The notes: generated by a model not told the origin, from the letters alone. DNA of 64,000 nt from Laetmonice hystrix (GCA_965235115.1 OZ249448.1:23684001-23748000), one strand, 5' to 3'; positions 1 to 41,550 are shown, numbered from the stretch's first letter. A program made the numbers and translations.

Positions 1-1220
1 AAGTACAAACCGGCGAGGGCCACCGAAACGTTAACCACAGACCACTTTACTCAACTCGGGCATCGCAACTGCGACCTGTCCCGCCTACAAATGGACAAAG
101 GTCATATAAAAGGTCAACCTTTTGAGGATGAGATAAATTCTCCAGACTTCAATGTAGACTCGGAAGTCTTTTCGATTTAACATGTCTTGTCTTGTGCATG
201 CTCTCCCGAAGGTGACCTTGGAAGTGTAGGATCCGGAGGGAGAATGTGGAAGGGGTTCCACCCTCCTTTAAAATATGTTAATGCTATTTCTTTCTAGCCC
301 ATTAAATAAACAATTTGTATAAATAAATTCACTAAATTCGTTGTGCATCTTCGCACTTATCAACATTATCTCAAATGACCAGATCCCCATTAAAAGTATG
401 AACTTCTCCATTAAAATGAGTTTGGATATAGGGAAAACGGTAACATGCCATGACTTTTAACGCCACGGTCATCCTACTCCATTATCCTCGGATTCCAGAG
501 AGCTTAGCTCTCCAATCAGTTCATCATTGCTTCATATCATTACCCAAAGTATAACTATTACTTTGTTAGTGTTCATCAGGTCAACTAGTCTGTTAAACTC
601 AAAGAAAAAAGCAGCCAGAGCATTACAATGTTACCACCAAACTTTTGTTTAGTTAGGCTCGGTTTGTTATGTAAATGTAGTTTGTATACTAGCCCCCCAC
701 CTAGGTTTACCTCTGGGGAAGGTTAAACGCGATGCAGGGAATAAACCCTCGCTTACCTTGATAGGGAGTCTGCCGTGGTTCAGGATTAATTCGTGTTGAG
801 ACAGTTGTGTATTCTTACCTTAATGTCAGCCTTTCAAAGCCCGACCTAGCACCAACTTACTGCTGTCTTTTTTCGTGTAACAGATGTTCTTTCAAAACGC
901 CTTTATCTTTGTTTAAAAAATGTAGCGGTACCCTTCTTCATTTTATATCAGCCAAGACGGCTCCATATTCTCCGTGTCACTCTACAACTGACATTAGAGA
1001 AGGCAAATACATTGACCTTTCTGAAGTTAACTGAGTATTTTGACTTTGCAGACGTACAAGTCTGCCCTTTTCACTCTGTACACTGCGAGTATTCATCACT
1101 GCAGACAAAATTAAATCATTTGCTCTCATTATGTTAACAAAGTGTCTTACTGGTAGGTTATTGACTTTTATTTGAAATTCCCATATTTATGAAAAATGTC
1201 AAATGCCCACTAATTCGCAC

Positions 1221-1316
1221 ACTCATGGTATGATGGCGGGGCAGAGTTGGAAACTCATGGTATGAAGGCGGGGCAGAGTTGGAAACTCATGGTATGATGG
1301 CGGGGCAGAGTTGGAA
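1221..1316. repeat. 32-bp tandem repeat x3
   Basis: Unit actcatggtatgatggcggggcagagttggaa. Confidence 0.9.
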
Positions 1317-1364
1317 AGCCTCGTTAAGCCTGATAAACGCCCAGTGAGTATCCTAGGTGTGTGA

Positions 1365-1612
1365 TTTCTGATTGCAGCTACGTATTGAATGTGCCTTCTG
1401 ATTGCAGCTACGTATTGAGTTGCCTTCTGATTGCAGCTACGTATTGAATGTGCCTTCTGATTGCAGCTACGTATTGAATGTGCTTTCTGATTGCAGCTAC
1501 GTATTGAATGTGCCTTCTGATTGCAGCTACGTATTGAATGTGCTTTCTGATTGCAGCTACGTATTGAGTGTGCCTTCTGATTACAGCTACGTATTGAGTG
1601 TGCCTGATTGCA
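1365..1612. repeat. 30-bp minisatellite x~8
   Basis: Unit gtgccttctgattgcagctacgtattgaat; explains ORF 1402..1722. Confidence 0.92.
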
Positions 1613-3119
1613 GGTATTATTGTCTATGTACAGAGGAGGGACACATTCTCAATCACTCTGTATGTATTCTCACGCTATCAGCCACATGTATACACTCGTT
1701 GTATAGATCTTGCCTAGCGTAGGTGGTCTTCCCCGCGTACTCCAGTTTCCACCACCAGTAGAACTGACCACGAATAGACCCTGGCTGTAGGGGAAGCGTA
1801 AAATCTCAATCCATAACGGAATCCCCTCACTGTCCCTCAGCATAATCGATATTTCAGTACTTTGACATTTTTTGTGCAATCATTGATATGAGCAAAATAT
1901 GCTCGGCATTCAGTCCAATGTAGGCATCGAAAATCTCCGCTCCAAGTTCAATATAAATTAAGTAGTAAATCGAAGGTGCATTGTTTCAACTTGAACGACA
2001 AAATAAACACAGTGTAGACCTATCTATGTCTCTACTTTGAACCTTTACTATAAATTATATCGAACATAAGTGAACGATACGTAAATCGGTGAATATCTAC
2101 CACTACCGTGCAGCAATGAGCGCGTTTGGTGGTGCATGAGCGAACCCTGTCTCAGTTCAGCGATAAGAAACGCCTTTAGTTCCGATTCCTCCCACCAGGT
2201 GGCCTTGCTGCCGACCTTCTCGAAACGATCTGGCAAAAAGGCCAGAAAACCGTGACATGCATGCTTCCGTTTGGCGCTCAAAAGCTGTACAATGGGAACT
2301 TATCGTTCAACAAAAACAAAACAAAAAAGTCTAAAAAATATTCGATAAGATACTGCTTCAAAATATACACGTGAAATGTCAAGGACAATCATACTAAAAT
2401 ATGCTTAGGTCGTAAAATGTGCCTTACCCCCCCCCCCCCCCCGGAAAAAAGCCGTCATGTCGAAAAGGCTCACGGAAGAAAATGTAGTTGGACAAGTAGA
2501 GAAAGCGAGTTGGCGATGGTGGGACTCGCCACCGCTTGGTCACATCTATATGCGGTGAAAATTCGATGTCAAACCAATTTAGTCTTGGAATATTCACCAA
2601 TGGGAGAAATTATAGCATATTTTGGCCACTATGAAAAGTAGCATATATGCTTATATAGCGCCTTATCAGATTAAGTATATTAAACTCATCTAATGTTAGA
2701 TGTAAAAAAACCCGTGGCTTTAATTGTTATGTCGACACAGTGTGAGTTTATAGAGACAGAGTCACTGCACGAAGGTCAAATTTCCATATTAACTTTGTGA
2801 AAATTCCCCCCAATTCGGATGTTAAGAGAAATGGTATGGTGCAGAGGATGTTCACGCTCACCGCCCACCTCAAACGACTACACACTACCATCCCCCACAA
2901 ACGACATCCTCTCGGCTCCCAACGGCGCCACTAACCAGGAGTTTTAGAATAAATCAAACCACATTACTGCATCAAGAAAATTCTCTGGTCAAATCGGTTT
3001 TCCATTTTCCTTTTTTTCAAAGGCGGGGTACGTCCGAAGAGGAATCTCGATTTGGTGGTCAACGTTGGAAACAATAAGAGAAGGCACGTGTAACGTTACC
3101 GGTCACGGGGTCACCCTAC

Positions 3120-3229
3120 CTGTTGTACATAAGTATATCAGGGTTCCAGATCTCCTTAGAGGGGAGACGAATACTGTGAACACCCCCGTACTCTGATTCG
3201 TTCCAAGTCATCTTGTAGTCTGCCCACTC
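3120..3229 (-). CDS. nAChR subunit, exon 4 variant d
   Basis: ccttactgcag|GAG, 110 nt, donor AACAG|GTAGGG. Translates EWADYKMTWNESEYGGVHSIRLPSKEIWNPDILMYN(S). Confidence 0.93.
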
Positions 3230-3268
3230 CTGCAGTAAGGAATCACATGGGTCAGGACAGACGCCTAC

Positions 3269-3378
3269 CTGTTATACATAAGAATATCTGGGTTCCAGAT
3301 CATTTTCGACGGAAGTCGTATACTATGTATGTCTTCGTATTCCGACTCGTTCCAGCCCAGCTTGTAGTCCTTCCATTC
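3269..3378 (-). CDS. nAChR subunit, exon 4 variant c
   Basis: cttacttgcag|GAA, 110 nt, donor AACAG|GTAGGC. Translates EWKDYKLGWNESEYEDIHSIRLPSKMIWNPDILMYN(S). Confidence 0.92.
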
Positions 3379-3415
3379 CTGCAAGTAAGCATGTCTCAGT
3401 TTGGATCGAGCCTAC

Positions 3416-3525
3416 CTGTTGTACATGAGTATATCGGGTGTCCACACCAGTGTGGATGGCAGCCGTATACTATGCACGCCAGCGAACTCTGACTCGTCCC
3501 ATCCAAGTTTGTAGTCCTTCCATTC
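3416..3525 (-). CDS. nAChR subunit, exon 4 variant b
   Basis: cttggttgcag|GAA, 110 nt, donor AACAG|GTAGGC. Translates EWKDYKLGWDESEFAGVHSIRLPSTLVWTPDILMYN(S). Confidence 0.92.
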
Positions 3526-3575
3526 CTGCAACCAAGCACACGCACAGGGGGCTCAGTACACATCCCAACCCCTAC

Positions 3576-3685
3576 CTGTTGTACATAAGTATATCCGGTG
3601 TCCATACTAACGTCGAAGGCAGCCGAACGCTGCCTACGTCACCGTATTCCGTTTCGTTCCATTTCAACTTGTAATCCGTCCAGAT
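3576..3685 (-). CDS. nAChR subunit, exon 4 variant a
   Basis: Long pyrimidine tract ...gttttgtcgtttttag|ATC, 110 nt, phase 0 to 2, donor AACAG|GTAGGG. Translates IWTDYKLKWNETEYGDVGSVRLPSTLVWTPDILMYN(S), with the loop A WxPDxxxYN motif. Confidence 0.93.
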
Positions 3686-5116
3686 CTAAAAACGACAAAA
3701 CACGGTGAAACGGGCAGACGACAAAAGTAAAGCCCATTCGGCACTTTCCGTACGCCGACCTCCACACGCCCCGGGTCAATGGGACCCCCACTTCGGCTCT
3801 GGTTGAGAAGATACATTGTGTAAAGGGCTTATCAATTAAACTATGCGATTTCTGCTCATCTACATTGGCCAGCCGAGAGGCAAAACGAACTGAGAGCAAA
3901 GGAAGTATCTAGACATGGGTGGGCTCGTGTGGAACTCAGTGACGTCACATTAAACACCAGCATGGAGTCGATGGACTGAGAGCAAAACCTAATTTTGCCA
4001 CAGAATTAAAGTTGTCATAGATAAATGAGATCTGTGGGGTTAAATGTCAACCGACTAAAGGAATAAAGGAATTAGTCTACATATATAGCGAAAACATAGT
4101 ATGCCATGCACTGCAAAGAAACTACTGGAGATAAATGGTTAGCTTGGGCATGTATGTACTAGGTAGGGGTTGGGCGCAATGTTAACATTTGAAAACAATA
4201 GGCCTATTCATAATCATACAGTTATCAACAGTAATAAACTTTCAAATTCAGTAGGTCATGAAGAGGAAGTTAGACTTGATTCTGTCACAAAAATTGGCGA
4301 TCTCTTCTTCGCGATTTCTCTGTTACATTTTAAGTCTGCTGCACAGTAGGACAAGCTATGGTAAACACCTGTTTACGGGCACAAGTTTGGCGAAAAGCAA
4401 GCGAATCCGACTTTTAGTAAACAGGAAAAGTAACGTGGTGAGGACAAACCTTTTTGTGACAGTTCTCGTGGGCTTTAGAGTTTTACTGATACAAGACAAA
4501 TATTTTTCTCAATGATATATTTAAACGGTTTTCCTATTGATTTAGAGAGGAATGATTTGGCAGATTGCTGAGAATGTCAGGAGATCACAATACATAACCT
4601 GGTATCACATGTATCACATCATTTCATGTATGGCATTCGAGTGAAACTTTTGAGGATATCAGTTTTGTTCAGTCTTCAATGAGTTCAAATGGAATCTCGA
4701 CCACAAGCCCGATACAACTGACCCTGTATTAACCACACACAAAACACACAATATCAACGTTTTTCTTCCTGTTTCGTTGTAGTCCTGCCACAATGTGCTC
4801 ATGTAATCTATATAAATATGCAGTTGACCACACCCAAGCTGTTTTATTATAACGGTTAACAGACTACGTGGTGACAGAGAATACTAGATAGACTGTTAGA
4901 TGTTAGATGATAACACTTTGAGAGGTTCGAAGTGGTAAAACTGATACCGACAGTTAAATAAATAGACTGTTAGACGCATTCAGCATTATTATAATACCTT
5001 AACCATGTTAGACACAGATCGTTTTAGAAATTGTAACAGTGTACATTATGACGATCGATCTAATTCAACAATTTACTTTTCTTGGCCACTCACTAATAAT
5101 TCCTGCGTATACTCAC

Positions 5117-5161
5117 GTAGTTCAGCCACATGTTCGTATGCAGCATCTCGTTCTTTTCATC
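5117..5161 (-). CDS. nAChR subunit, exon 3 (45 nt, single copy; contains loop D Trp)
   Basis: catttccag|GATGAAAAGAACGAGATGCTGCATACGAACATGTGGCTGAACTAC|gtgagt translates to DEKNEMLHTNMWLNY. This is the canonical 45-nt phase 0-0 nAChR exon (DEKNQ..TN.WL). Confidence 0.95.
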
Positions 5162-6779: not shown

Positions 6780-6925
6780 CACGTCAATGATTTGCTGAAG
6801 AGCGATACCAAATTTGACCTCAATGGAATCCATCTCCTTGGGAACGGGACGCGAGAGTCGGTTGTAGTTTCGTCTGCCGAATATGTCATTTATGAGTCTC
6901 TCCTCGTGCGGACCCTGCAGGCTCT
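6780..6925 (-). CDS. nAChR subunit, exon 2 variant b (partial CDS)
   Basis: Pyrimidine tract, CACTAAC/GACTAAT branch-like motifs, acceptor ttcacag|AG, 146 nt, phase 1 to 0, donor GTG|GTAGGC. Translates (E)SLQGPHEERLINDIFGRRNYNRLSRPVPKEMDSIEVKFGIALQQIIDV. Confidence 0.93.
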
Positions 6926-7939: not shown

Positions 7940-8079
7940 CACGTCGATGATTTGCTGAAGGGAAATGCCGAAGTTAACCTCGACGGCGTCCGATTCCTTT
8001 TCTACTGGTCGTGCTAACTTATTGTAGCGACTGAAGATATCCTCTATAAGCCGTTCCTCGTGCTGTCCTGCTCGGGCGC
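7940..8079 (-). CDS. nAChR subunit (alpha7-like group), exon 2 variant a (partial CDS)
   Basis: Acceptor ...ttgcccacacag|GC, 140 nt, phase 1 to 0, donor GTG|GTAAGA. Translates (G)ARAGQHEERLIEDIFSRYNKLARPVEKESDAVEVNFGISLQQIIDV, the nAChR N-terminal helix to beta1 (compare Drosophila alpha6 GPHEKRLL...RPV.NESEPLEVKFGLTLQQIIDV). Confidence 0.93.
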
Positions 8080-30700: not shown

Positions 30701-30878
30701 ATCCAGGGTTTATCTAAATAAATCATTCTGATTACACCCCATCCTACCCGTCCACATGTGGACGTGGGTTGCTGAGGGAAGCGGCTTATCTTCCCGACAA
30801 TTAACCACTAAGTGGATAACGCCATCTAGCGGCCTCTGCCCAACACTTTGCAATAATACCGTGATCAGGAAATGTGTG

Positions 30879-31089
30879 CCTGTCTGCCAGCGTCCAGTAT
30901 TGTGCAATCCTGTCTGCCAGCGTCCAGTGGTGTGCAATCCTGTCTGCCAGCGTCCAGTATTGTGCAATCCTGTCTGCTAGCGTCCAGTGATGTGCAATCC
31001 TGGCTGCCAGCGTCCAGTATTGTGCAATCCTGTCTGCCAGCGTCCAGTGGTGTGCAATCCTGTCTGCCAGCGTCCAGTATTGTGCAATC
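30879..31089. repeat. 30-bp minisatellite x7
   Basis: Unit tgtgcaatcctgtctgccagcgtccagt(at/gg). Confidence 0.93.
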
Positions 31090-33614
31090 AGTGCTTGACG
31101 AGGACGTCCTGTTCATTCTCGGACATTGGCAAAGTGCAAGGATGTAAGATTTTGGAAAGCTTGTGGGCGGTGAGGGCGGTGGACTACGCGGACGTGATGA
31201 CGTCACTTTGTGCGGCGATGCCACTGTGACGTCACTAGCACAGCGTCTGTGGCACGTTATATGACCAATAACGCGGTAGTTCCTTTACTTTTGATCTCCT
31301 CGCTAGGTGAGAATTGACGGACGCTAGGATAGCCTTCCAGTCAGGCAACAAGATGTGGCGATTCGTTTCAATAGTAATATACATTATTACCTATTCTGTC
31401 AGTGTAACTGTCAAATGTAAATTTGGCGTGACGTCACAAACAGAGACCCGATCTGACTTCGTCACACGTTCGCTACTAGTCAACCTCTCTTCTCATGTAG
31501 AAAGTGTTTCCAAACACATTACTGTCATGTCGTCGGCTAGATCAAAGGGTCTCACTGCGGGGCTGGTCATGCAGTCATGCGTTCAAGGCACCCATAAATA
31601 GTTGAGCATTATGATTCGTCATCGTGTCAACTCCCAAACGAATCGTACCCCGGGCCTCAATTGCCTGTCATGTAAAATTTAGTACTCTAATGGGAAATTT
31701 GGTGTCCCTGTGGGTTAGAACTGCTTTTGAAGCACTTCCGCCAATGCTCTAAATCTGCTGATGTCAGCATTACAAGCGTCTAGTCGCGGCTATCCAGTAA
31801 AGTTGAGAATTACTGCTAATTTTGCGGTTATCACCGTTACAATCTATTCAGTAACTTCTTTCAAATTCTCATGTAACATAGATTTGATAAGGCGGATACA
31901 CTCTACTGTCTATGGGGACAAGACGTTGTGCCAGTGTTAACATACATAATTATCCGGTCGAATACAAAAGGCTCTACCTTGTGAACCTATAGGACTGCAA
32001 GAAACCGGAAATACCTCTCACCAGAGCATGAGGACTTTCACATCGGGATAAACTGACATTCTGAATGGCATATCATAAATCGTTTGTGCCTTTTGACATG
32101 GAAAATAAAAGGTATCCGGATCCTTAATGGGTTGCCTGAATCTGGTTAAACCCTGCGTGTCAGATGAGATCTAATGGAAGGATATTGAGGGAGTTGCTTT
32201 ATGATCGGCGCCCCATGCCTCTCGGTGGTCATTCTGTGTAAAGATTCGTAACACACCGGGGACATCCGGGCATTCAGGTCGCATATCACCATAGTTACCG
32301 TTCACCGATCAACCTTCACTTGAACGTTTCCGGCGGTACATTACTTGACGTCTCCATCATCTCGCCACCGCGTGTAACGGCTTGCAAGTTTCTACTCTTA
32401 AGGTTGGGCACTTGAATTTTTGTGGACTAAAAACATCCGACTGCGTAATCACCAAAGCGCCCCCAGCCGAGGAGAAAGCGTTAGATCTTTCGCGCCTTCT
32501 TCCGGTAGGCAATGAAACTTCTGTCCTGATTACTGTATCTCATGAGCATAAACCTTTTTGAAATAATTTCAATTTTTTTCTTTGTTTCGGTTTTACTGTC
32601 TGTACTGTCTGTGTTGGCCAAAACCTACAGATCTCTTTTCGTTCTGCAGTGAGATAGACAGGCCCCCCGTATTTTACCAGAAAGTTTCGATTAGAGGCAC
32701 GTAGCAATAATTCTGGCCCTGAACCATAAATATATCCCATATAAACAGTCAGCCATTTTTTGACTGCCCCAGGCTGGCCCGTTATGATAATTCGGCTCGG
32801 ACCGTTCTAAAGCCCCTACTCCAGCCCGTGTGTGAATTGTCTACGACGGTTAGGATGTATCAAATACCGGGAAATCTTTCCAAGGTTGAAAGCATTAAGA
32901 GGACGCTGATAAGGAGAAGCAGATCTGAGTGGGGTGTTTTTATACACACCGTCAGGCAGCACCAGAACTCGTATGCGATATGATGTGATAATCTCATGTT
33001 ATGACAGAGAAAGGGTCGGACATGTGGAGAATTGATCGTCATGTGTGCACGAGGAACGTCCACGGAGGACGAGGAGGTATGGGTGTAAGCTCGAGGCGTG
33101 GGCGAGGGGGGCGGGGGCTCACGTTCTGCACTAATCTGACAGACCGGCTAAGTCCCTTATTGAATTAAGACAAATTTACTTCAATAATGCATTTTCTTAA
33201 ACTAATGGCCGTTTGTGATGGGCGGACTGAGAGTATACGAGGCAAGATATTTTAAATCCTTTAAACATGATTTCCCTGAATGTCATTACGTATAAAGAAA
33301 CAAGTTTTTCTCGATTGGACTGCTGTCGGTAGAACCCGGCGGCTGCCCCCCCCCCCCCCACCACCACCACCACCTCCCCCGCGCCTCGCCAATCTCGGAG
33401 TCATCTTAACGTCGGCATCATCCTCAAATAATCCAAACTCAATGTTTTATCATCTCTGGGTCTGGGAGATCATTGAGAGTAATTTATGCTTTCCGTTAAC
33501 GCGTTCATCTCTTGTCTGGATGTGTTTTTAATTTCTGACAATGGCGCAGTTCATACGTATCATTTGTGTTGATGTATTGCGTTACTCTATGCGTTATAAC
33601 TCACGTAGATATGG

Positions 33615-40316: not shown

Positions 40317-41126
40317 TATCCCCCCCCCCCCCCCACCATTTTTACACTGACCTGGACTGAGAAGGCAGAGACCGGATTAGGCCAAGAGTAGCGCTATAAG
40401 TAGTGATATGATAATCAGAGTAAAATATAAAAAGATTTACAATGCGTGCACTGATATTGTTTCCTTCCTCGACAGCAGCTGACACATCTTCACTCGCCAC
40501 GCGTCAAACTACAGTTTTTTAATCTTCGTTTCTGAGAGAGAGTATTTTTATGAAGAAATAGATACTTTGGATTTAATGAAATCCGTTGGGAAAGAAAGCC
40601 GCTCGTCAAGATTAAGACAAGCTTTTGTTGATAATTTCAATTACCAGAGTCTTTGGCCACTTTGAAACGTTCTTCATAAGGACGGGATGATTGGGAAATG
40701 AAAAAGAATTAGTCTGGCTGGTAGCTAGCTATATAATCAATATAAACAATGGATGTCCACATATCGTAAGTTGGCAGCGATAGTCTGTCACTGCAGACAA
40801 TGGTATCAACATTGATATGGCCTGTACTTCCGGTACTGTGGGCTCGTAACTAAGGGCAACCTAACTGTCATAACTAAGGGTGAGTGTCGAACGCTGATAG
40901 CAAGTCTACCGACGTCTGTCTTAGATACCAGACGAATCCACACAAGTTTTCTATAGGTGAGTGTCCTCTGTGGGATATCAGACTGCATTGTCTCATATGG
41001 CCTTTCAAAGTATTCTTTGAAATATACTTAATGACACTTTTGTTATCGAATCTTTACTAAAAACTGAACAAAACTTTACGGATTGTTTCCCAAACAGTTT
41101 CAATGTTTGAACGTTCGACTGCCACT

Positions 41127-41550
41127 CAAGTTCTTTATGAGAGTTAAACCCCACACTATTTGTGTTCCTCCAATGTTTTCAAGTTCTTGATGAGAGTTAA
41201 ACCCCGCACTATTTGTGTTCCTCCAATGTTTTCAAGTTCTTGATGAGAGTTAAACCCCGCACTATTTGTGTTCCTCCAATGTTTTCAAGTTCTTGATGAG
41301 AGTTAAACCCCGCACTATTTGTGTTCCTCCAATGTTTTCAAGTTCTTGATGAGAGTTAAACCCCGCACTATTTGTGTTCCTCCAATGTTTTCAAGTTCTT
41401 GATGAGAGTTAAACCCCGCACTATTTGTGTTCCTCCAATGTTTTCAAGTTCTTGATGAGAGTTAAACCCCGCACTATTTGTGTTCCTCCAATGTTTTCAA
41501 GTTCTTGATGAGAGTTAAACCCCACACTCTGTGTGTTCCTCCAATGTTTT
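41127..41550. repeat. 53-bp minisatellite x~8
   Basis: Unit gagagttaaaccccgcactatttgtgttcctccaatgttttcaagttcttgat. Confidence 0.95.

What the first reader, a model, noticed from the sequence alone, without database searches (positions are those of the whole stretch)
3120..3685. Four tandem 110-nt exon 4 copies, diverged but all intact
The copies share 24-29 of 36 residues pairwise (a/b 26, b/c 27, c/d 29, a/d 24, counted by hand). Shared residues often use different synonymous codons (a: CCT TCG ACG TTA GTA; b: CCA TCC ACA CTG GTG). There are no indels or stops, and all end TAYAACAG|GTAGG. This looks like old duplicates under purifying selection, not an assembly collapse or pseudo-exons. Loop A WxPDILMYN is invariant, while the beta2-beta3 loop and the residues just before loop A vary.
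Basis: seen in the sequence. Interest (0 to 1): 0.85.

Follow-up and report, generated by a model that had tools for sequence, protein, structure and literature searches.

The report
Four interchangeable exons, one receptor gene
A worm-like (probably annelid) animal's alpha7-type nicotinic acetylcholine receptor gene holds four intact, long-preserved versions of one 110-base exon. Only one version at a time fits the reading frame, so the gene very probably makes four receptor variants; this is a new example of a known trick and has not yet been shown in RNA.

Summary
On the minus strand lie four 110-nt exons (3685-3576, 3525-3416, 3378-3269, 3229-3120), each AG|…|GTAGG, each open in one frame, separated by 50, 37 and 39 nt. 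They are the MIR-loop/loop-A exon of an alpha7/acr-16/insect-alpha6-like nAChR alpha-subunit gene, whose other exons I located.

Synonymous sites between copies are saturated (pS 0.73-1.0) while pN is 0.11-0.20. A deeply diverged relative keeps the same four copies in the same order, all intact (pN/pS about 0.15). More distant relatives have one exon 4.

Independent DNA contigs span the array at normal depth, so it is not an assembly artefact. Only inclusion of exactly one copy keeps the frame; the 12 other combinations hit stop codons.

The best reading is a four-way mutually exclusive exon cluster, enforced by micro-introns too short to splice plus frame-shift/NMD. No RNA run was available, so use of each copy is inferred.

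The kind is known: insect alpha6 exons 3 and 8. RefSeq isoforms of the nemertean Lineus already swap two exon-4 versions of this gene. The interest is therefore moderate.

The parts
3576..3685 (-). exon 4a (110 nt, first in transcription order)
   Evidence: AG|ATCTGG…AACAG|GTAGG, with frame 0 open. PF02931 hit at E 7.9e-8. It has a positional counterpart in the relative, L011 5890-5999.
3416..3525 (-). exon 4b (110 nt)
   Evidence: PF02931 hit at E 1.8e-8. It is 31/36 identical to the second copy of L011, which is the reciprocal best match. This is the only pair with fair tree support (82/86).
3269..3378 (-). exon 4c (110 nt)
   Evidence: PF02931 hit at E 9.1e-10. It is 31/36 identical to the third copy of L011, the reciprocal best match.
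3120..3229 (-). exon 4d (110 nt, last copy)
   Evidence: PF02931 hit at E 4.5e-9. It shares the D-Y-K-M motif only with the fourth copy of L011.
3526..3575 (-). micro-intron between 4a and 4b, 50 nt
   Evidence: GT…AG, measured. The relative has 63 nt here.
3379..3415 (-). micro-intron between 4b and 4c, 37 nt
   Evidence: The relative has 41 nt here.
3230..3268 (-). micro-intron between 4c and 4d, 39 nt
   Evidence: The relative has 53 nt here.
5117..5161 (-). exon 3 (45 nt, single copy; beta1-beta2 loop and loop D region)
   Evidence: The sequence reads cag|GAT…TAC|gtgagt. It is 100% identical at protein level in L011.
3686..5116 (-). intron 3 (1431 nt), whose donor must choose one of four acceptors
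   Evidence: Bounded by the exon coordinates above. There is no sequence conservation with the relative.
1..3119 (-). intron 4 (runs 6 nt beyond the window start). Exon 5 (254 nt) lies just outside the window at G000:C18:23683740-23683993.
7940..8079 (-). exon 2a (140 nt; N-terminal helix and beta1)
   Evidence: Conserved in L011/L013.
6780..6925 (-). exon 2b (146 nt; second version of exon 2)
   Evidence: Conserved in L011/L013, and a pair also exists in L012.

Best explanation
The four copies are a cluster of mutually exclusive alternative exons in a single alpha7/acr-16/insect-alpha6-like nicotinic receptor alpha-subunit gene.

- Every mRNA takes exon 3, exactly one of 4a-4d, then exon 5.
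- The chosen exon supplies 36 residues equivalent to muscle alpha1 59-94. This covers the end of beta2, the beta2-beta3 'MIR' loop at the apex of the extracellular domain, beta3, and loop A of the agonist site.
- The loop-A core stays fixed. The apex loop and the three residues before loop A's Trp differ between versions.
- One gene therefore yields four ectodomain variants, or eight when combined with the two exon-2 versions that encode the N-terminal helix packing against that loop.
- These variants probably differ in assembly or partner choice and in agonist sensitivity.

Exclusivity most likely rests on two things.

1. The 37-50-nt gaps between neighbouring copies are too short to be spliced. 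Each copy's branch-site region lies within about 13-25 nt of the previous copy's donor.
2. The 110-nt length is not a multiple of three, so any other combination shifts the frame into a stop codon and would be removed by nonsense-mediated decay.

Shown: the anatomy, the selection, the conservation and the frame arithmetic. Inferred: the actual splicing, the steric block and the functional differences.
For: Anatomy:
- Four copies have equal length, equal phase and intact AG/GT sites.
- All eight exon-2/exon-4 combinations give one open frame of 458/460 codons with a Cys-loop (C-x13-C), loop C Y-E-C-C and TM1-TM4.

Frame: only single inclusion is open. Skipping and all 11 multiple inclusions give stop codons.

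Selection:
- Between copies pS is 0.73-1.0 and pN 0.11-0.20.
- Against the orthologous copies in L011, pooled pN is 0.125 and pS 0.854 (pN/pS 0.147; Fisher test against neutrality 2e-37).
- Every single copy shows pN 0.07-0.19.
- Copies this diverged cannot have been kept open by recent gene conversion.

Conservation:
- L011 and L013 keep 2 x exon 2, 1 x exon 3 and 4 x exon 4, with micro-introns of 63, 41 and 53 nt.
- The in-register alignment of the arrays has E 3e-77 against 4e-31 or worse out of register.
- The introns are otherwise unalignable.

Other support:
- Uniqueness: among 42 exon-4-like matches in the genome this is the only tandem array, and the next best match is only 57% identical, so these are not gene duplicates.
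- Intron size: in about 20 paralogues the exon 4-exon 5 spacing is roughly 0.13-4.4 kb, never tens of bases.
- Precedent in the same gene family: mRNA-derived orthologues carry exactly one exon-4 segment between exons 3 and 5. Lineus longissimus RefSeq isoforms X1 and X4 differ only in this exon. Owenia and Lineus isoforms swap exon 6.
- Structure mapping: the exon aligns without gaps to alpha1 59-94. MIR is residues 67-76 and packs on the N-terminal helix (PMC5404922).
Against: - There is no RNA evidence for this species. Both run searches returned only DNA-like runs of one sample.
- Which copies are used, where, and whether strictly one at a time, is therefore untested.
- The minimum spliceable intron length of this animal is unknown, and the relative's first gap is 63 nt.
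- Steric hindrance cannot stop non-neighbouring copies (a+c, a+d, b+d) from being joined. For those only the frame rule, or an unseen regulator, applies.
- The exon-4 tree is unresolved except for the 4b pair, so one-to-one orthology of 4a and 4d rests on position and a few shared residues.
- Polymorphism depletion in the cluster is only marginal in the relative's two haplotypes (2 substitutions against 6.4 expected, P 0.045).
Confidence: 0.8

Rival explanations
1. Only one copy (or two) is a working exon. The others are silent relics that happen to look intact.
For: No transcript data exist for this species. mRNA-derived orthologues seen in the protein collection each show only one exon-4 version per species. 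More distant relatives manage with a single exon 4.
Against: Each of the four copies separately shows protein-level constraint across a divergence at which synonymous sites are saturated and introns unalignable. Per-copy pN is 0.07-0.19 against pS 0.72-1.0, with no stop, no indel and all eight splice-site pairs kept in both species. An unused 110-nt stretch would not survive that. Copies are too diverged from each other for gene conversion to have kept them open.
Confidence: 0.06
2. The array is an assembly artefact: a collapse or expansion of a repeat, or haplotypes stacked in tandem.
For: It is a tandem repeat of about 148 nt. The DNA runs that hold it come from one sample and may be the one used for the assembly.
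Against: Copies differ by 24-31% at nucleotide level, so they are not haplotypes. De Bruijn contigs from three runs bridge the array at flank-level depth. The same four-copy array stands in two long-read contigs of another species.
Confidence: 0.01
3. The copies are mutually exclusive exons, but the choice and exclusivity are governed mainly by competing RNA pairing (docking and selector sites, as in Dscam exon 6 or 14-3-3 xi) or by copy-specific splicing repressors, not by micro-intron steric hindrance.
For: Steric hindrance cannot exclude non-adjacent pairs. The relative's first gap (63 nt) may be spliceable. Regulated, tissue-specific choice needs some cis-code in any case.
Against: Apart from the exons, nothing in introns 3 and 4 or in the micro-introns aligns between the two species at blastn word size 7, E 1e-3. 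There is therefore no conserved docking element at that sensitivity. The short gaps are themselves conserved as short in both species (37-50 and 41-63 nt). The shared 3' ends of the copies vary at synonymous sites, so no common RNA element is evident there.
Confidence: 0.2

Closest known systems
Insect nAChR alpha6 (Dalpha6 and orthologues): mutually exclusive exons 3a/3b and 8a/8b/8c
   Same: It belongs to the same receptor clade: insect alpha6/alpha7 proteins are about 47-52% identical to the orthologue P0227. Both show tandem exon duplication giving alternative versions of one segment, one per mRNA, and combinatorial use of two clusters (PMC1919356, PMC2064938).
   Different: The insect clusters sit at the 45-nt exon near loop D and at the TM2 exon. 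Here exon 3 and the TM2 exon are single, and the clusters are at the MIR/loop-A exon (four copies) and the N-terminal-helix exon (two copies). The insect isoforms are shown by RT-PCR, whereas these are not.
Lineus longissimus (nemertean) alpha7-like gene, RefSeq isoforms X1-X6 (XP_064652926 and others)
   Same: It is in the same gene family. Isoforms X1 and X4 have equal length (480 aa) and differ only within the 36-residue segment equivalent to this exon. Other isoforms swap exon 3 or exon 6.
   Different: It has two versions of exon 4 rather than four. These are annotation models and I did not see the gene structure or read support. The origin is probably independent, because annelid relatives L012 and L017/L018 have a single exon 4.
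Insect nAChR alpha4 exon 4 / exon 4'
   Same: An alternative exon pair in an nAChR alpha subunit, also named 'exon 4', and thought to influence assembly (PMC2064938).
   Different: It is not the homologous segment. The insect pair covers the Cys-loop vicinity (PMC2064938), whereas this exon ends before the Cys-loop, which lies in exon 5 here.
Alpha-tropomyosin exons 2/3 (steric-hindrance type of mutual exclusion; Smith and Nadal-Ginard 1989, from my own knowledge)
   Same: Neighbouring alternative exons are separated by a distance too short for U1 and U2 to act on the same intron. NMD removes frame-shifted double inclusions in many such genes.
   Different: Here there are four exons rather than two, so non-adjacent joins are not sterically blocked. 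The steric block is inferred from length only and was not tested.
Owenia fusiformis and the L012-species orthologues with duplicated exon 6
   Same: The same annelid gene lineage diversifies by tandem exon duplication. Owenia isoforms CAH1797306 and CAH1797307 differ only in the loop C/TM1 exon. L012 has at least six intact copies of it.
   Different: A different exon is involved, and its 195-nt length is a multiple of three, so the frame cannot enforce exclusivity there.

Membership tests
Cys-loop (pentameric) ligand-gated ion channel, nAChR alpha subunit | Neur_chan_LBD (PF02931) followed by Neur_chan_memb (PF02932) | tested here: met
   PF02931 hits on exon 5 (E 3.9e-21) and on each exon-4 copy. 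PF02931 and PF02932 were called on the orthologous loci and proteins. TM1-TM4 exons were found by tblastn.
Cys-loop (pentameric) ligand-gated ion channel, nAChR alpha subunit | Cys-loop C-x13-C, and vicinal cysteines in loop C (Y-x-C-C) that define alpha subunits | tested here: met
   The spliced translation has C-x13-C in exon 5 and Y-E-C-C in exon 6.
alpha7 / acr-16 / insect alpha6-like clade | Nearest named relatives belong to that clade | tested here: met
   Best named hits are Ridgeia, Lamellibrachia 'acr-16', Hirudo nAChR 11 and Owenia. Next come 'alpha-7-like'/'acr-16-like' proteins of nemerteans, molluscs and brachiopods, and insect alpha6/alpha7. No phylogeny was built.
Mutually exclusive exon cluster from tandem exon duplication | Adjacent homologous exons of the same length and phase with intact splice sites | tested here: met
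   4 x 110 nt, phase 0 start and 2-nt overhang, AG/GT in all copies, 24-29/36 identical.
Mutually exclusive exon cluster from tandem exon duplication | Only one copy compatible with the reading frame | tested here: met
   Single inclusion is open. Skipping and all 11 multiple combinations hit stop codons.
Mutually exclusive exon cluster from tandem exon duplication | Each copy kept by selection on the protein | tested here: met
   Per-copy pN 0.07-0.19 against pS 0.72-1.0 relative to the orthologous copies. All copies are intact in two species.
Mutually exclusive exon cluster from tandem exon duplication | mRNAs contain exactly one copy, and each copy is found in some mRNA | not testable with these tools
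   No RNA run was offered for this animal, and the single read-laying run showed DNA contigs only. Orthologue mRNAs carry one exon-4 segment, and Lineus models swap two.
Steric-hindrance type of mutual exclusion | Intron between alternative exons shorter than the organism's minimal spliceable length, or branch site too near the upstream donor | tested here: inconclusive
   Gaps are 50, 37 and 39 nt (63, 41 and 53 in the relative). The corresponding intron in about 20 paralogues is about 0.13-4.4 kb. The species' minimum intron length and the real branch points are unknown.
Docking-site/selector RNA-pairing type of mutual exclusion | Conserved intronic element complementary to a sequence next to each alternative exon | tested here: not met
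   No intronic block aligns between this genome and L011 from exon 2a to exon 5. Short or diverged pairings would be missed.

The most novel reading that the evidence does not exclude
The two exon-2 versions (N-terminal helix) and the four exon-4 versions (MIR loop, which packs on that helix) may be chosen in a coordinated way. One gene would then produce a set of subunits with matched but distinct apex surfaces and loop-A surroundings. These isoforms would co-assemble into 'heteromers of one gene', or sort to different partners or chaperones. That would replace, in this lineage, the gene-duplication route to receptor diversity used by molluscs.
Probability: 0.1. Interest if true: 0.7.

Novelty: new member of a known kind. 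Interest (0 to 1): 0.4.

Why it matters
- It adds a four-way switch at a part of the nicotinic receptor not previously described in papers as alternatively spliced: the apex (MIR) loop plus the surroundings of loop A. I found no such paper in the searchable library.
- The alpha7/alpha6-like gene has built exon-swap clusters again and again at different exons in different phyla. Insects use exons 3 and 8. Molluscs and nemerteans use exon 3. A nemertean uses exons 4 and 6. Annelids use exons 2, 4 and 6.
- The four natural versions, which differ at about 16 of 36 positions around an invariant loop-A core, are a ready-made mutagenesis series. They could be used to ask what the apex loop does for assembly and gating.
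- The micro-intron arrangement is a clean natural case for testing steric exclusion with more than two exons.
- For annotation, gene predictors will mis-join or drop such exons. Several database proteins seen here are such mis-joins.

Tried and rejected
- **RNA evidence.** Two run searches (the whole 5.9-kb stretch, then the last exon) gave only DNA-like runs of one sample. Run X4 looked as if it might be a transcriptome by size, but laid only 151-nt intronic pieces.
- **Transcripts of close relatives with different exon-4 versions.** Searches with exon 5, with a mixed profile, and with the 84%-identical mRNA-derived P0227 found no closer full-length protein.
- **Short metagenome contigs** (L007-L010, L014-L016) were too short to show the exon-4 region.
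- **Tree of the 11 exon-4 sequences.** It was unresolved apart from the 4b pair, so it is not used as evidence of orthology.
- **JC-corrected dS and dN/dS ratios.** These are mostly undefined because pS exceeds 0.75, so proportions are reported instead.
- **Conserved intronic docking elements.** None were found.
- **Polymorphism depletion as a selection test.** It is only marginal for the cluster (P 0.045). In this species no variant is listed inside the cluster, but 24 variants were not shown.
- **First fragment alignment (A1).** It mis-placed several exons and was replaced by A2.
- **Exon 1 (signal peptide).** It was not located.

Full report
**1. What is in the sequence**

The feature lies on the minus strand. 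Four exons of exactly 110 nt occupy window 3685-3576 (4a), 3525-3416 (4b), 3378-3269 (4c) and 3229-3120 (4d).

- Each follows a pyrimidine-rich tract and AG, ends …TAYAACAG, and is followed by GTAGG.
- Only frame 0 is open in all four; the other frames carry stops in most copies.
- The gaps between copies are 50, 37 and 39 nt.
- Tandem Repeats Finder sees the array (period 147-149).
- Each copy separately matches Pfam Neur_chan_LBD positions about 53-95 (E 8e-8 to 9e-10).

**2. The gene around it**

The window is G000:C18:23684001-23748000 of a 627-Mb, 35-contig assembly. Using fetched flanks and reference proteins from the representative search, I placed the other exons on the minus strand.

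| Exon | Position (window coordinates) | Length | Content |
|---|---|---|---|
| 2a | 8079-7940 | 140 nt | first version of exon 2 |
| 2b | 6925-6780 | 146 nt | second version of exon 2 |
| 3 | 5161-5117 | 45 nt | single copy |
| 4a-4d | 3685-3120 | 4 x 110 nt | the array |
| 5 | -7 to -260 (just outside the window; C18:23683740-23683993) | 254 nt | Cys-loop |
| 6 | left of the window | 195 nt | loop C Y-E-C-C and TM1 |
| 7 | left of the window | 87 nt | TM2 |
| 8 | left of the window | 110 nt | TM3 |
| 9 | left of the window | 438 nt | loop and TM4 |

- All eight exon-2/exon-4 combinations give one open frame of 458 or 460 codons.
- Exon 1 was not found.
- Only exons 2 and 4 are multiplied within the 104 kb examined.
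- Among 42 exon-4-like matches in the whole genome this is the only tandem array. The next best match is 57% identical, so the copies are not fragments of duplicated genes.

**3. Is it real DNA?**

Contigs that Logan assembled from three DNA runs (one sample) cover the stretch at 30-62x, the same as the flanks. Two records bridge the whole array, and one covers it with no difference.

The same architecture also stands in two long-read contigs of another species (section 4). An assembly artefact is excluded for practical purposes.

**4. Selection and age**

Between the four copies, synonymous sites are saturated (pS 0.73-1.0) while pN is 0.11-0.20. Differences fall 17-20 on third codon positions against 4-9 on the others.

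A search with exon 5 found a 90%-identical fragment on a 2-Mb contig. Its locus L011, and a 98.3%-identical second contig L013, hold the orthologous gene:

- two exon-2 versions, one exon 3 and four exon-4 copies of 110 nt, all with AG/GT;
- gaps of 63, 41 and 53 nt between the exon-4 copies;
- single exons 5-9.

That species is far away. At the single-copy (constitutive) exons protein identity is 90-100%, but pS is 0.74, and nothing outside exons aligns.

The arrays align in register (E 3e-77 against 4e-31 or worse out of register). Copy-specific residues are shared by position:

- G-W-D-E-S-E in 4b;
- M-I-W-N-P-D in 4c;
- D-Y-K-M in 4d;
- K-L-K-W-N with Y-G-D-V in 4a.

4b and 4c are reciprocal best matches (31/36). 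A maximum-likelihood tree of these short, saturated sequences resolves only the 4b pair (82/86). Orthology of 4a and 4d therefore rests on position.

| Exon class | pN | pS | pN/pS |
|---|---|---|---|
| Four exon-4 copies, pooled | 0.125 | 0.854 | 0.147 |
| Constitutive exons | 0.043 | 0.736 | 0.058 |

- The test of the exon-4 copies against neutrality gives P 2e-37.
- The alternative exons change about three times faster in protein than the constitutive ones (Fisher 8e-7). They are still strongly constrained, each one separately.
- More distant relatives (L012; L017/L018) have a single exon 4. The quadruplication therefore arose within this lineage, before the split from the L011 species.
- Between the relative's two haplotypes the cluster has 2 substitutions, both silent, against 6.4 expected (P 0.045). 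All exons together have 4 against 20 expected (P 2e-5).

**5. How it most likely works**

- With exon 3 and exon 5 attached, only inclusion of exactly one copy keeps the frame. Skipping, and all 11 combinations of two, three or four copies, meet a stop codon. These stops lie upstream of further exon junctions, which by established knowledge makes such mRNAs NMD targets.
- The gaps of 37-50 nt are far below the corresponding intron in about 20 paralogues of this genome, which is roughly 0.13-4.4 kb by hit coordinates.
- Branch-site-like motifs for each copy lie only about 13-25 nt from the previous copy's donor (read). Simultaneous use of a donor and the next acceptor is then implausible. This is the alpha-tropomyosin type of steric exclusion (my own knowledge).
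- That cannot forbid a+c, a+d or b+d joins. For those only the frame rule, or unseen regulators, applies.
- I found no intronic block conserved between the two species that could serve as a docking site.

**6. What the exon encodes**

- The 36 residues align without gaps to residues 59-94 of muscle/Torpedo alpha1, 59-93 of alpha7 and 66-101 of alpha4 in solved structures.
- In alpha1 numbering the variable positions are 59, 61, 65-66, 68, 70, 72-76, 78, 83-85 and 87. The W86-x-P-D-I-L-M-Y-N loop-A core is invariant.
- Residues 67-76 are the main immunogenic region loop. It sits at the apex and packs, through Tyr72, on the N-terminal helix (PMC5404922).
- That helix is encoded here by the duplicated exon 2.
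- The two clusters thus remodel one contiguous surface plus the immediate surroundings of loop A.
- Effects on assembly or partner choice and on agonist sensitivity are the likeliest consequences. This is inference.

**7. Comparison with what is known**

- The protein belongs to the alpha7/acr-16/insect-alpha6-like clade. The nearest named proteins are from Ridgeia, Lamellibrachia, Hirudo (nAChR 11), Owenia and Helobdella, then nemerteans, molluscs and insect alpha6/alpha7. The animal is therefore probably an annelid.
- Insect alpha6 is the textbook case of mutually exclusive exons in a nicotinic receptor, at exons 3a/b and 8a/b/c (PMC1919356, PMC2064938).
- Insect alpha4 'exon 4/4'' covers the Cys-loop vicinity and is not this segment (PMC2064938).
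- Equal-length RefSeq isoforms show where relatives swap exons:
  - Haliotis, Biomphalaria, Aplysia and Tubulanus swap exon 3.
  - Owenia swaps exon 6.
  - Lineus longissimus swaps exon 3, exon 6 and, in X1 against X4, exactly the exon-4 segment.
- mRNA-derived orthologues carry one exon-4 segment between exons 3 and 5.
- In the searchable library I found no paper describing exon swapping of this gene in lophotrochozoans. The main survey of their nAChRs does not treat splicing (PMC6896357).

**8. Verdict**

The locus is a genuine, selected, lineage-specific four-copy alternative-exon cluster in an alpha7-like receptor gene.

It is a new member of a well-known kind. Its notable points are four copies, micro-introns, and a segment (MIR loop/loop A) not described as alternative in papers.

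Earlier notes of this scan on the same window (combinatorial 2 x 1 x 4 system; micro-introns plus frame arithmetic; exon-2 pair) agree with what I found. Notes on other parts of the genome suggest that such clusters are common in this animal.

Noticed in passing
window 6780-6925 and 7940-8079 (minus strand): There are two versions of exon 2 (146 and 140 nt; N-terminal helix and beta1) about 1 kb apart. Both are kept in L011/L013, and a pair is also present in the more distant L012. Both lengths are 2 mod 3, so joint inclusion would shift the frame.
   Followed up: partly
L012:11526-19502: A more distant relative of the same gene has one exon 4 but at least six intact copies of the loop C/TM1 exon (exon 6). 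They are spaced 0.6-2.9 kb apart, and all have AG acceptors and A|GTAAG donors. The locus ends before the array may end. Exon 6 is 195 nt in this genome, a multiple of three.
   Followed up: partly
proteins P0229/P0341, P0339/P0340, P0221 (Owenia fusiformis): Annotated isoform pairs differ only in the exon-6 segment. The 607-aa model P0221 carries both versions in tandem, which is probably a mis-join.
   Followed up: partly
proteins P0439, P0342, P0440, P0437, P0438 (Lineus longissimus RefSeq X1-X6): Equal-length isoforms of the alpha7-like gene differ by swaps at exon 3, exon 4 and exon 6. Mollusc isoform pairs (Haliotis, Biomphalaria, Aplysia) and a Tubulanus pair differ at exon 3, the position of the insect alpha6 3a/3b pair. 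This suggests an old exon-3 switch across protostomes that this annelid gene lacks.
   Followed up: partly
protein P0080 (432 aa) and P0012 (580 aa): Database proteins of other species appear to concatenate several alternative exons: four TM2 versions in P0080 and a repeated exon-4 segment in P0012. These are typical mis-annotations of such clusters.
   Followed up: no
window 1221-1317 and 1366-1605: Two tandem repeats lie inside intron 4: a 32-nt unit x 3 (96% matches) and a 30-nt unit x 8 (95% matches).
   Followed up: no
L017:5714-5827 and L018:5687-5800: A degenerate partial copy of exon 6 lies directly upstream of the intact exon 6 in another relative. It may be a decaying duplicate.
   Followed up: no
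G000:C18 about 23651000-23656600 (L004/L005; window -27450 to -32920): A long-period tandem repeat (about 850 nt per unit, at least five units) showed up as repeated spurious tblastn hits downstream of the gene.
   Followed up: no
window 30732-31226 (+) and 41124-41519 (-): Open frames made of short repeated peptide units (C-Q-R-P-V-x-C-N-P-V repeats; a 53-nt periodic repeat) were seen in motif and tblastn scans. Their nature is unknown.
   Followed up: no
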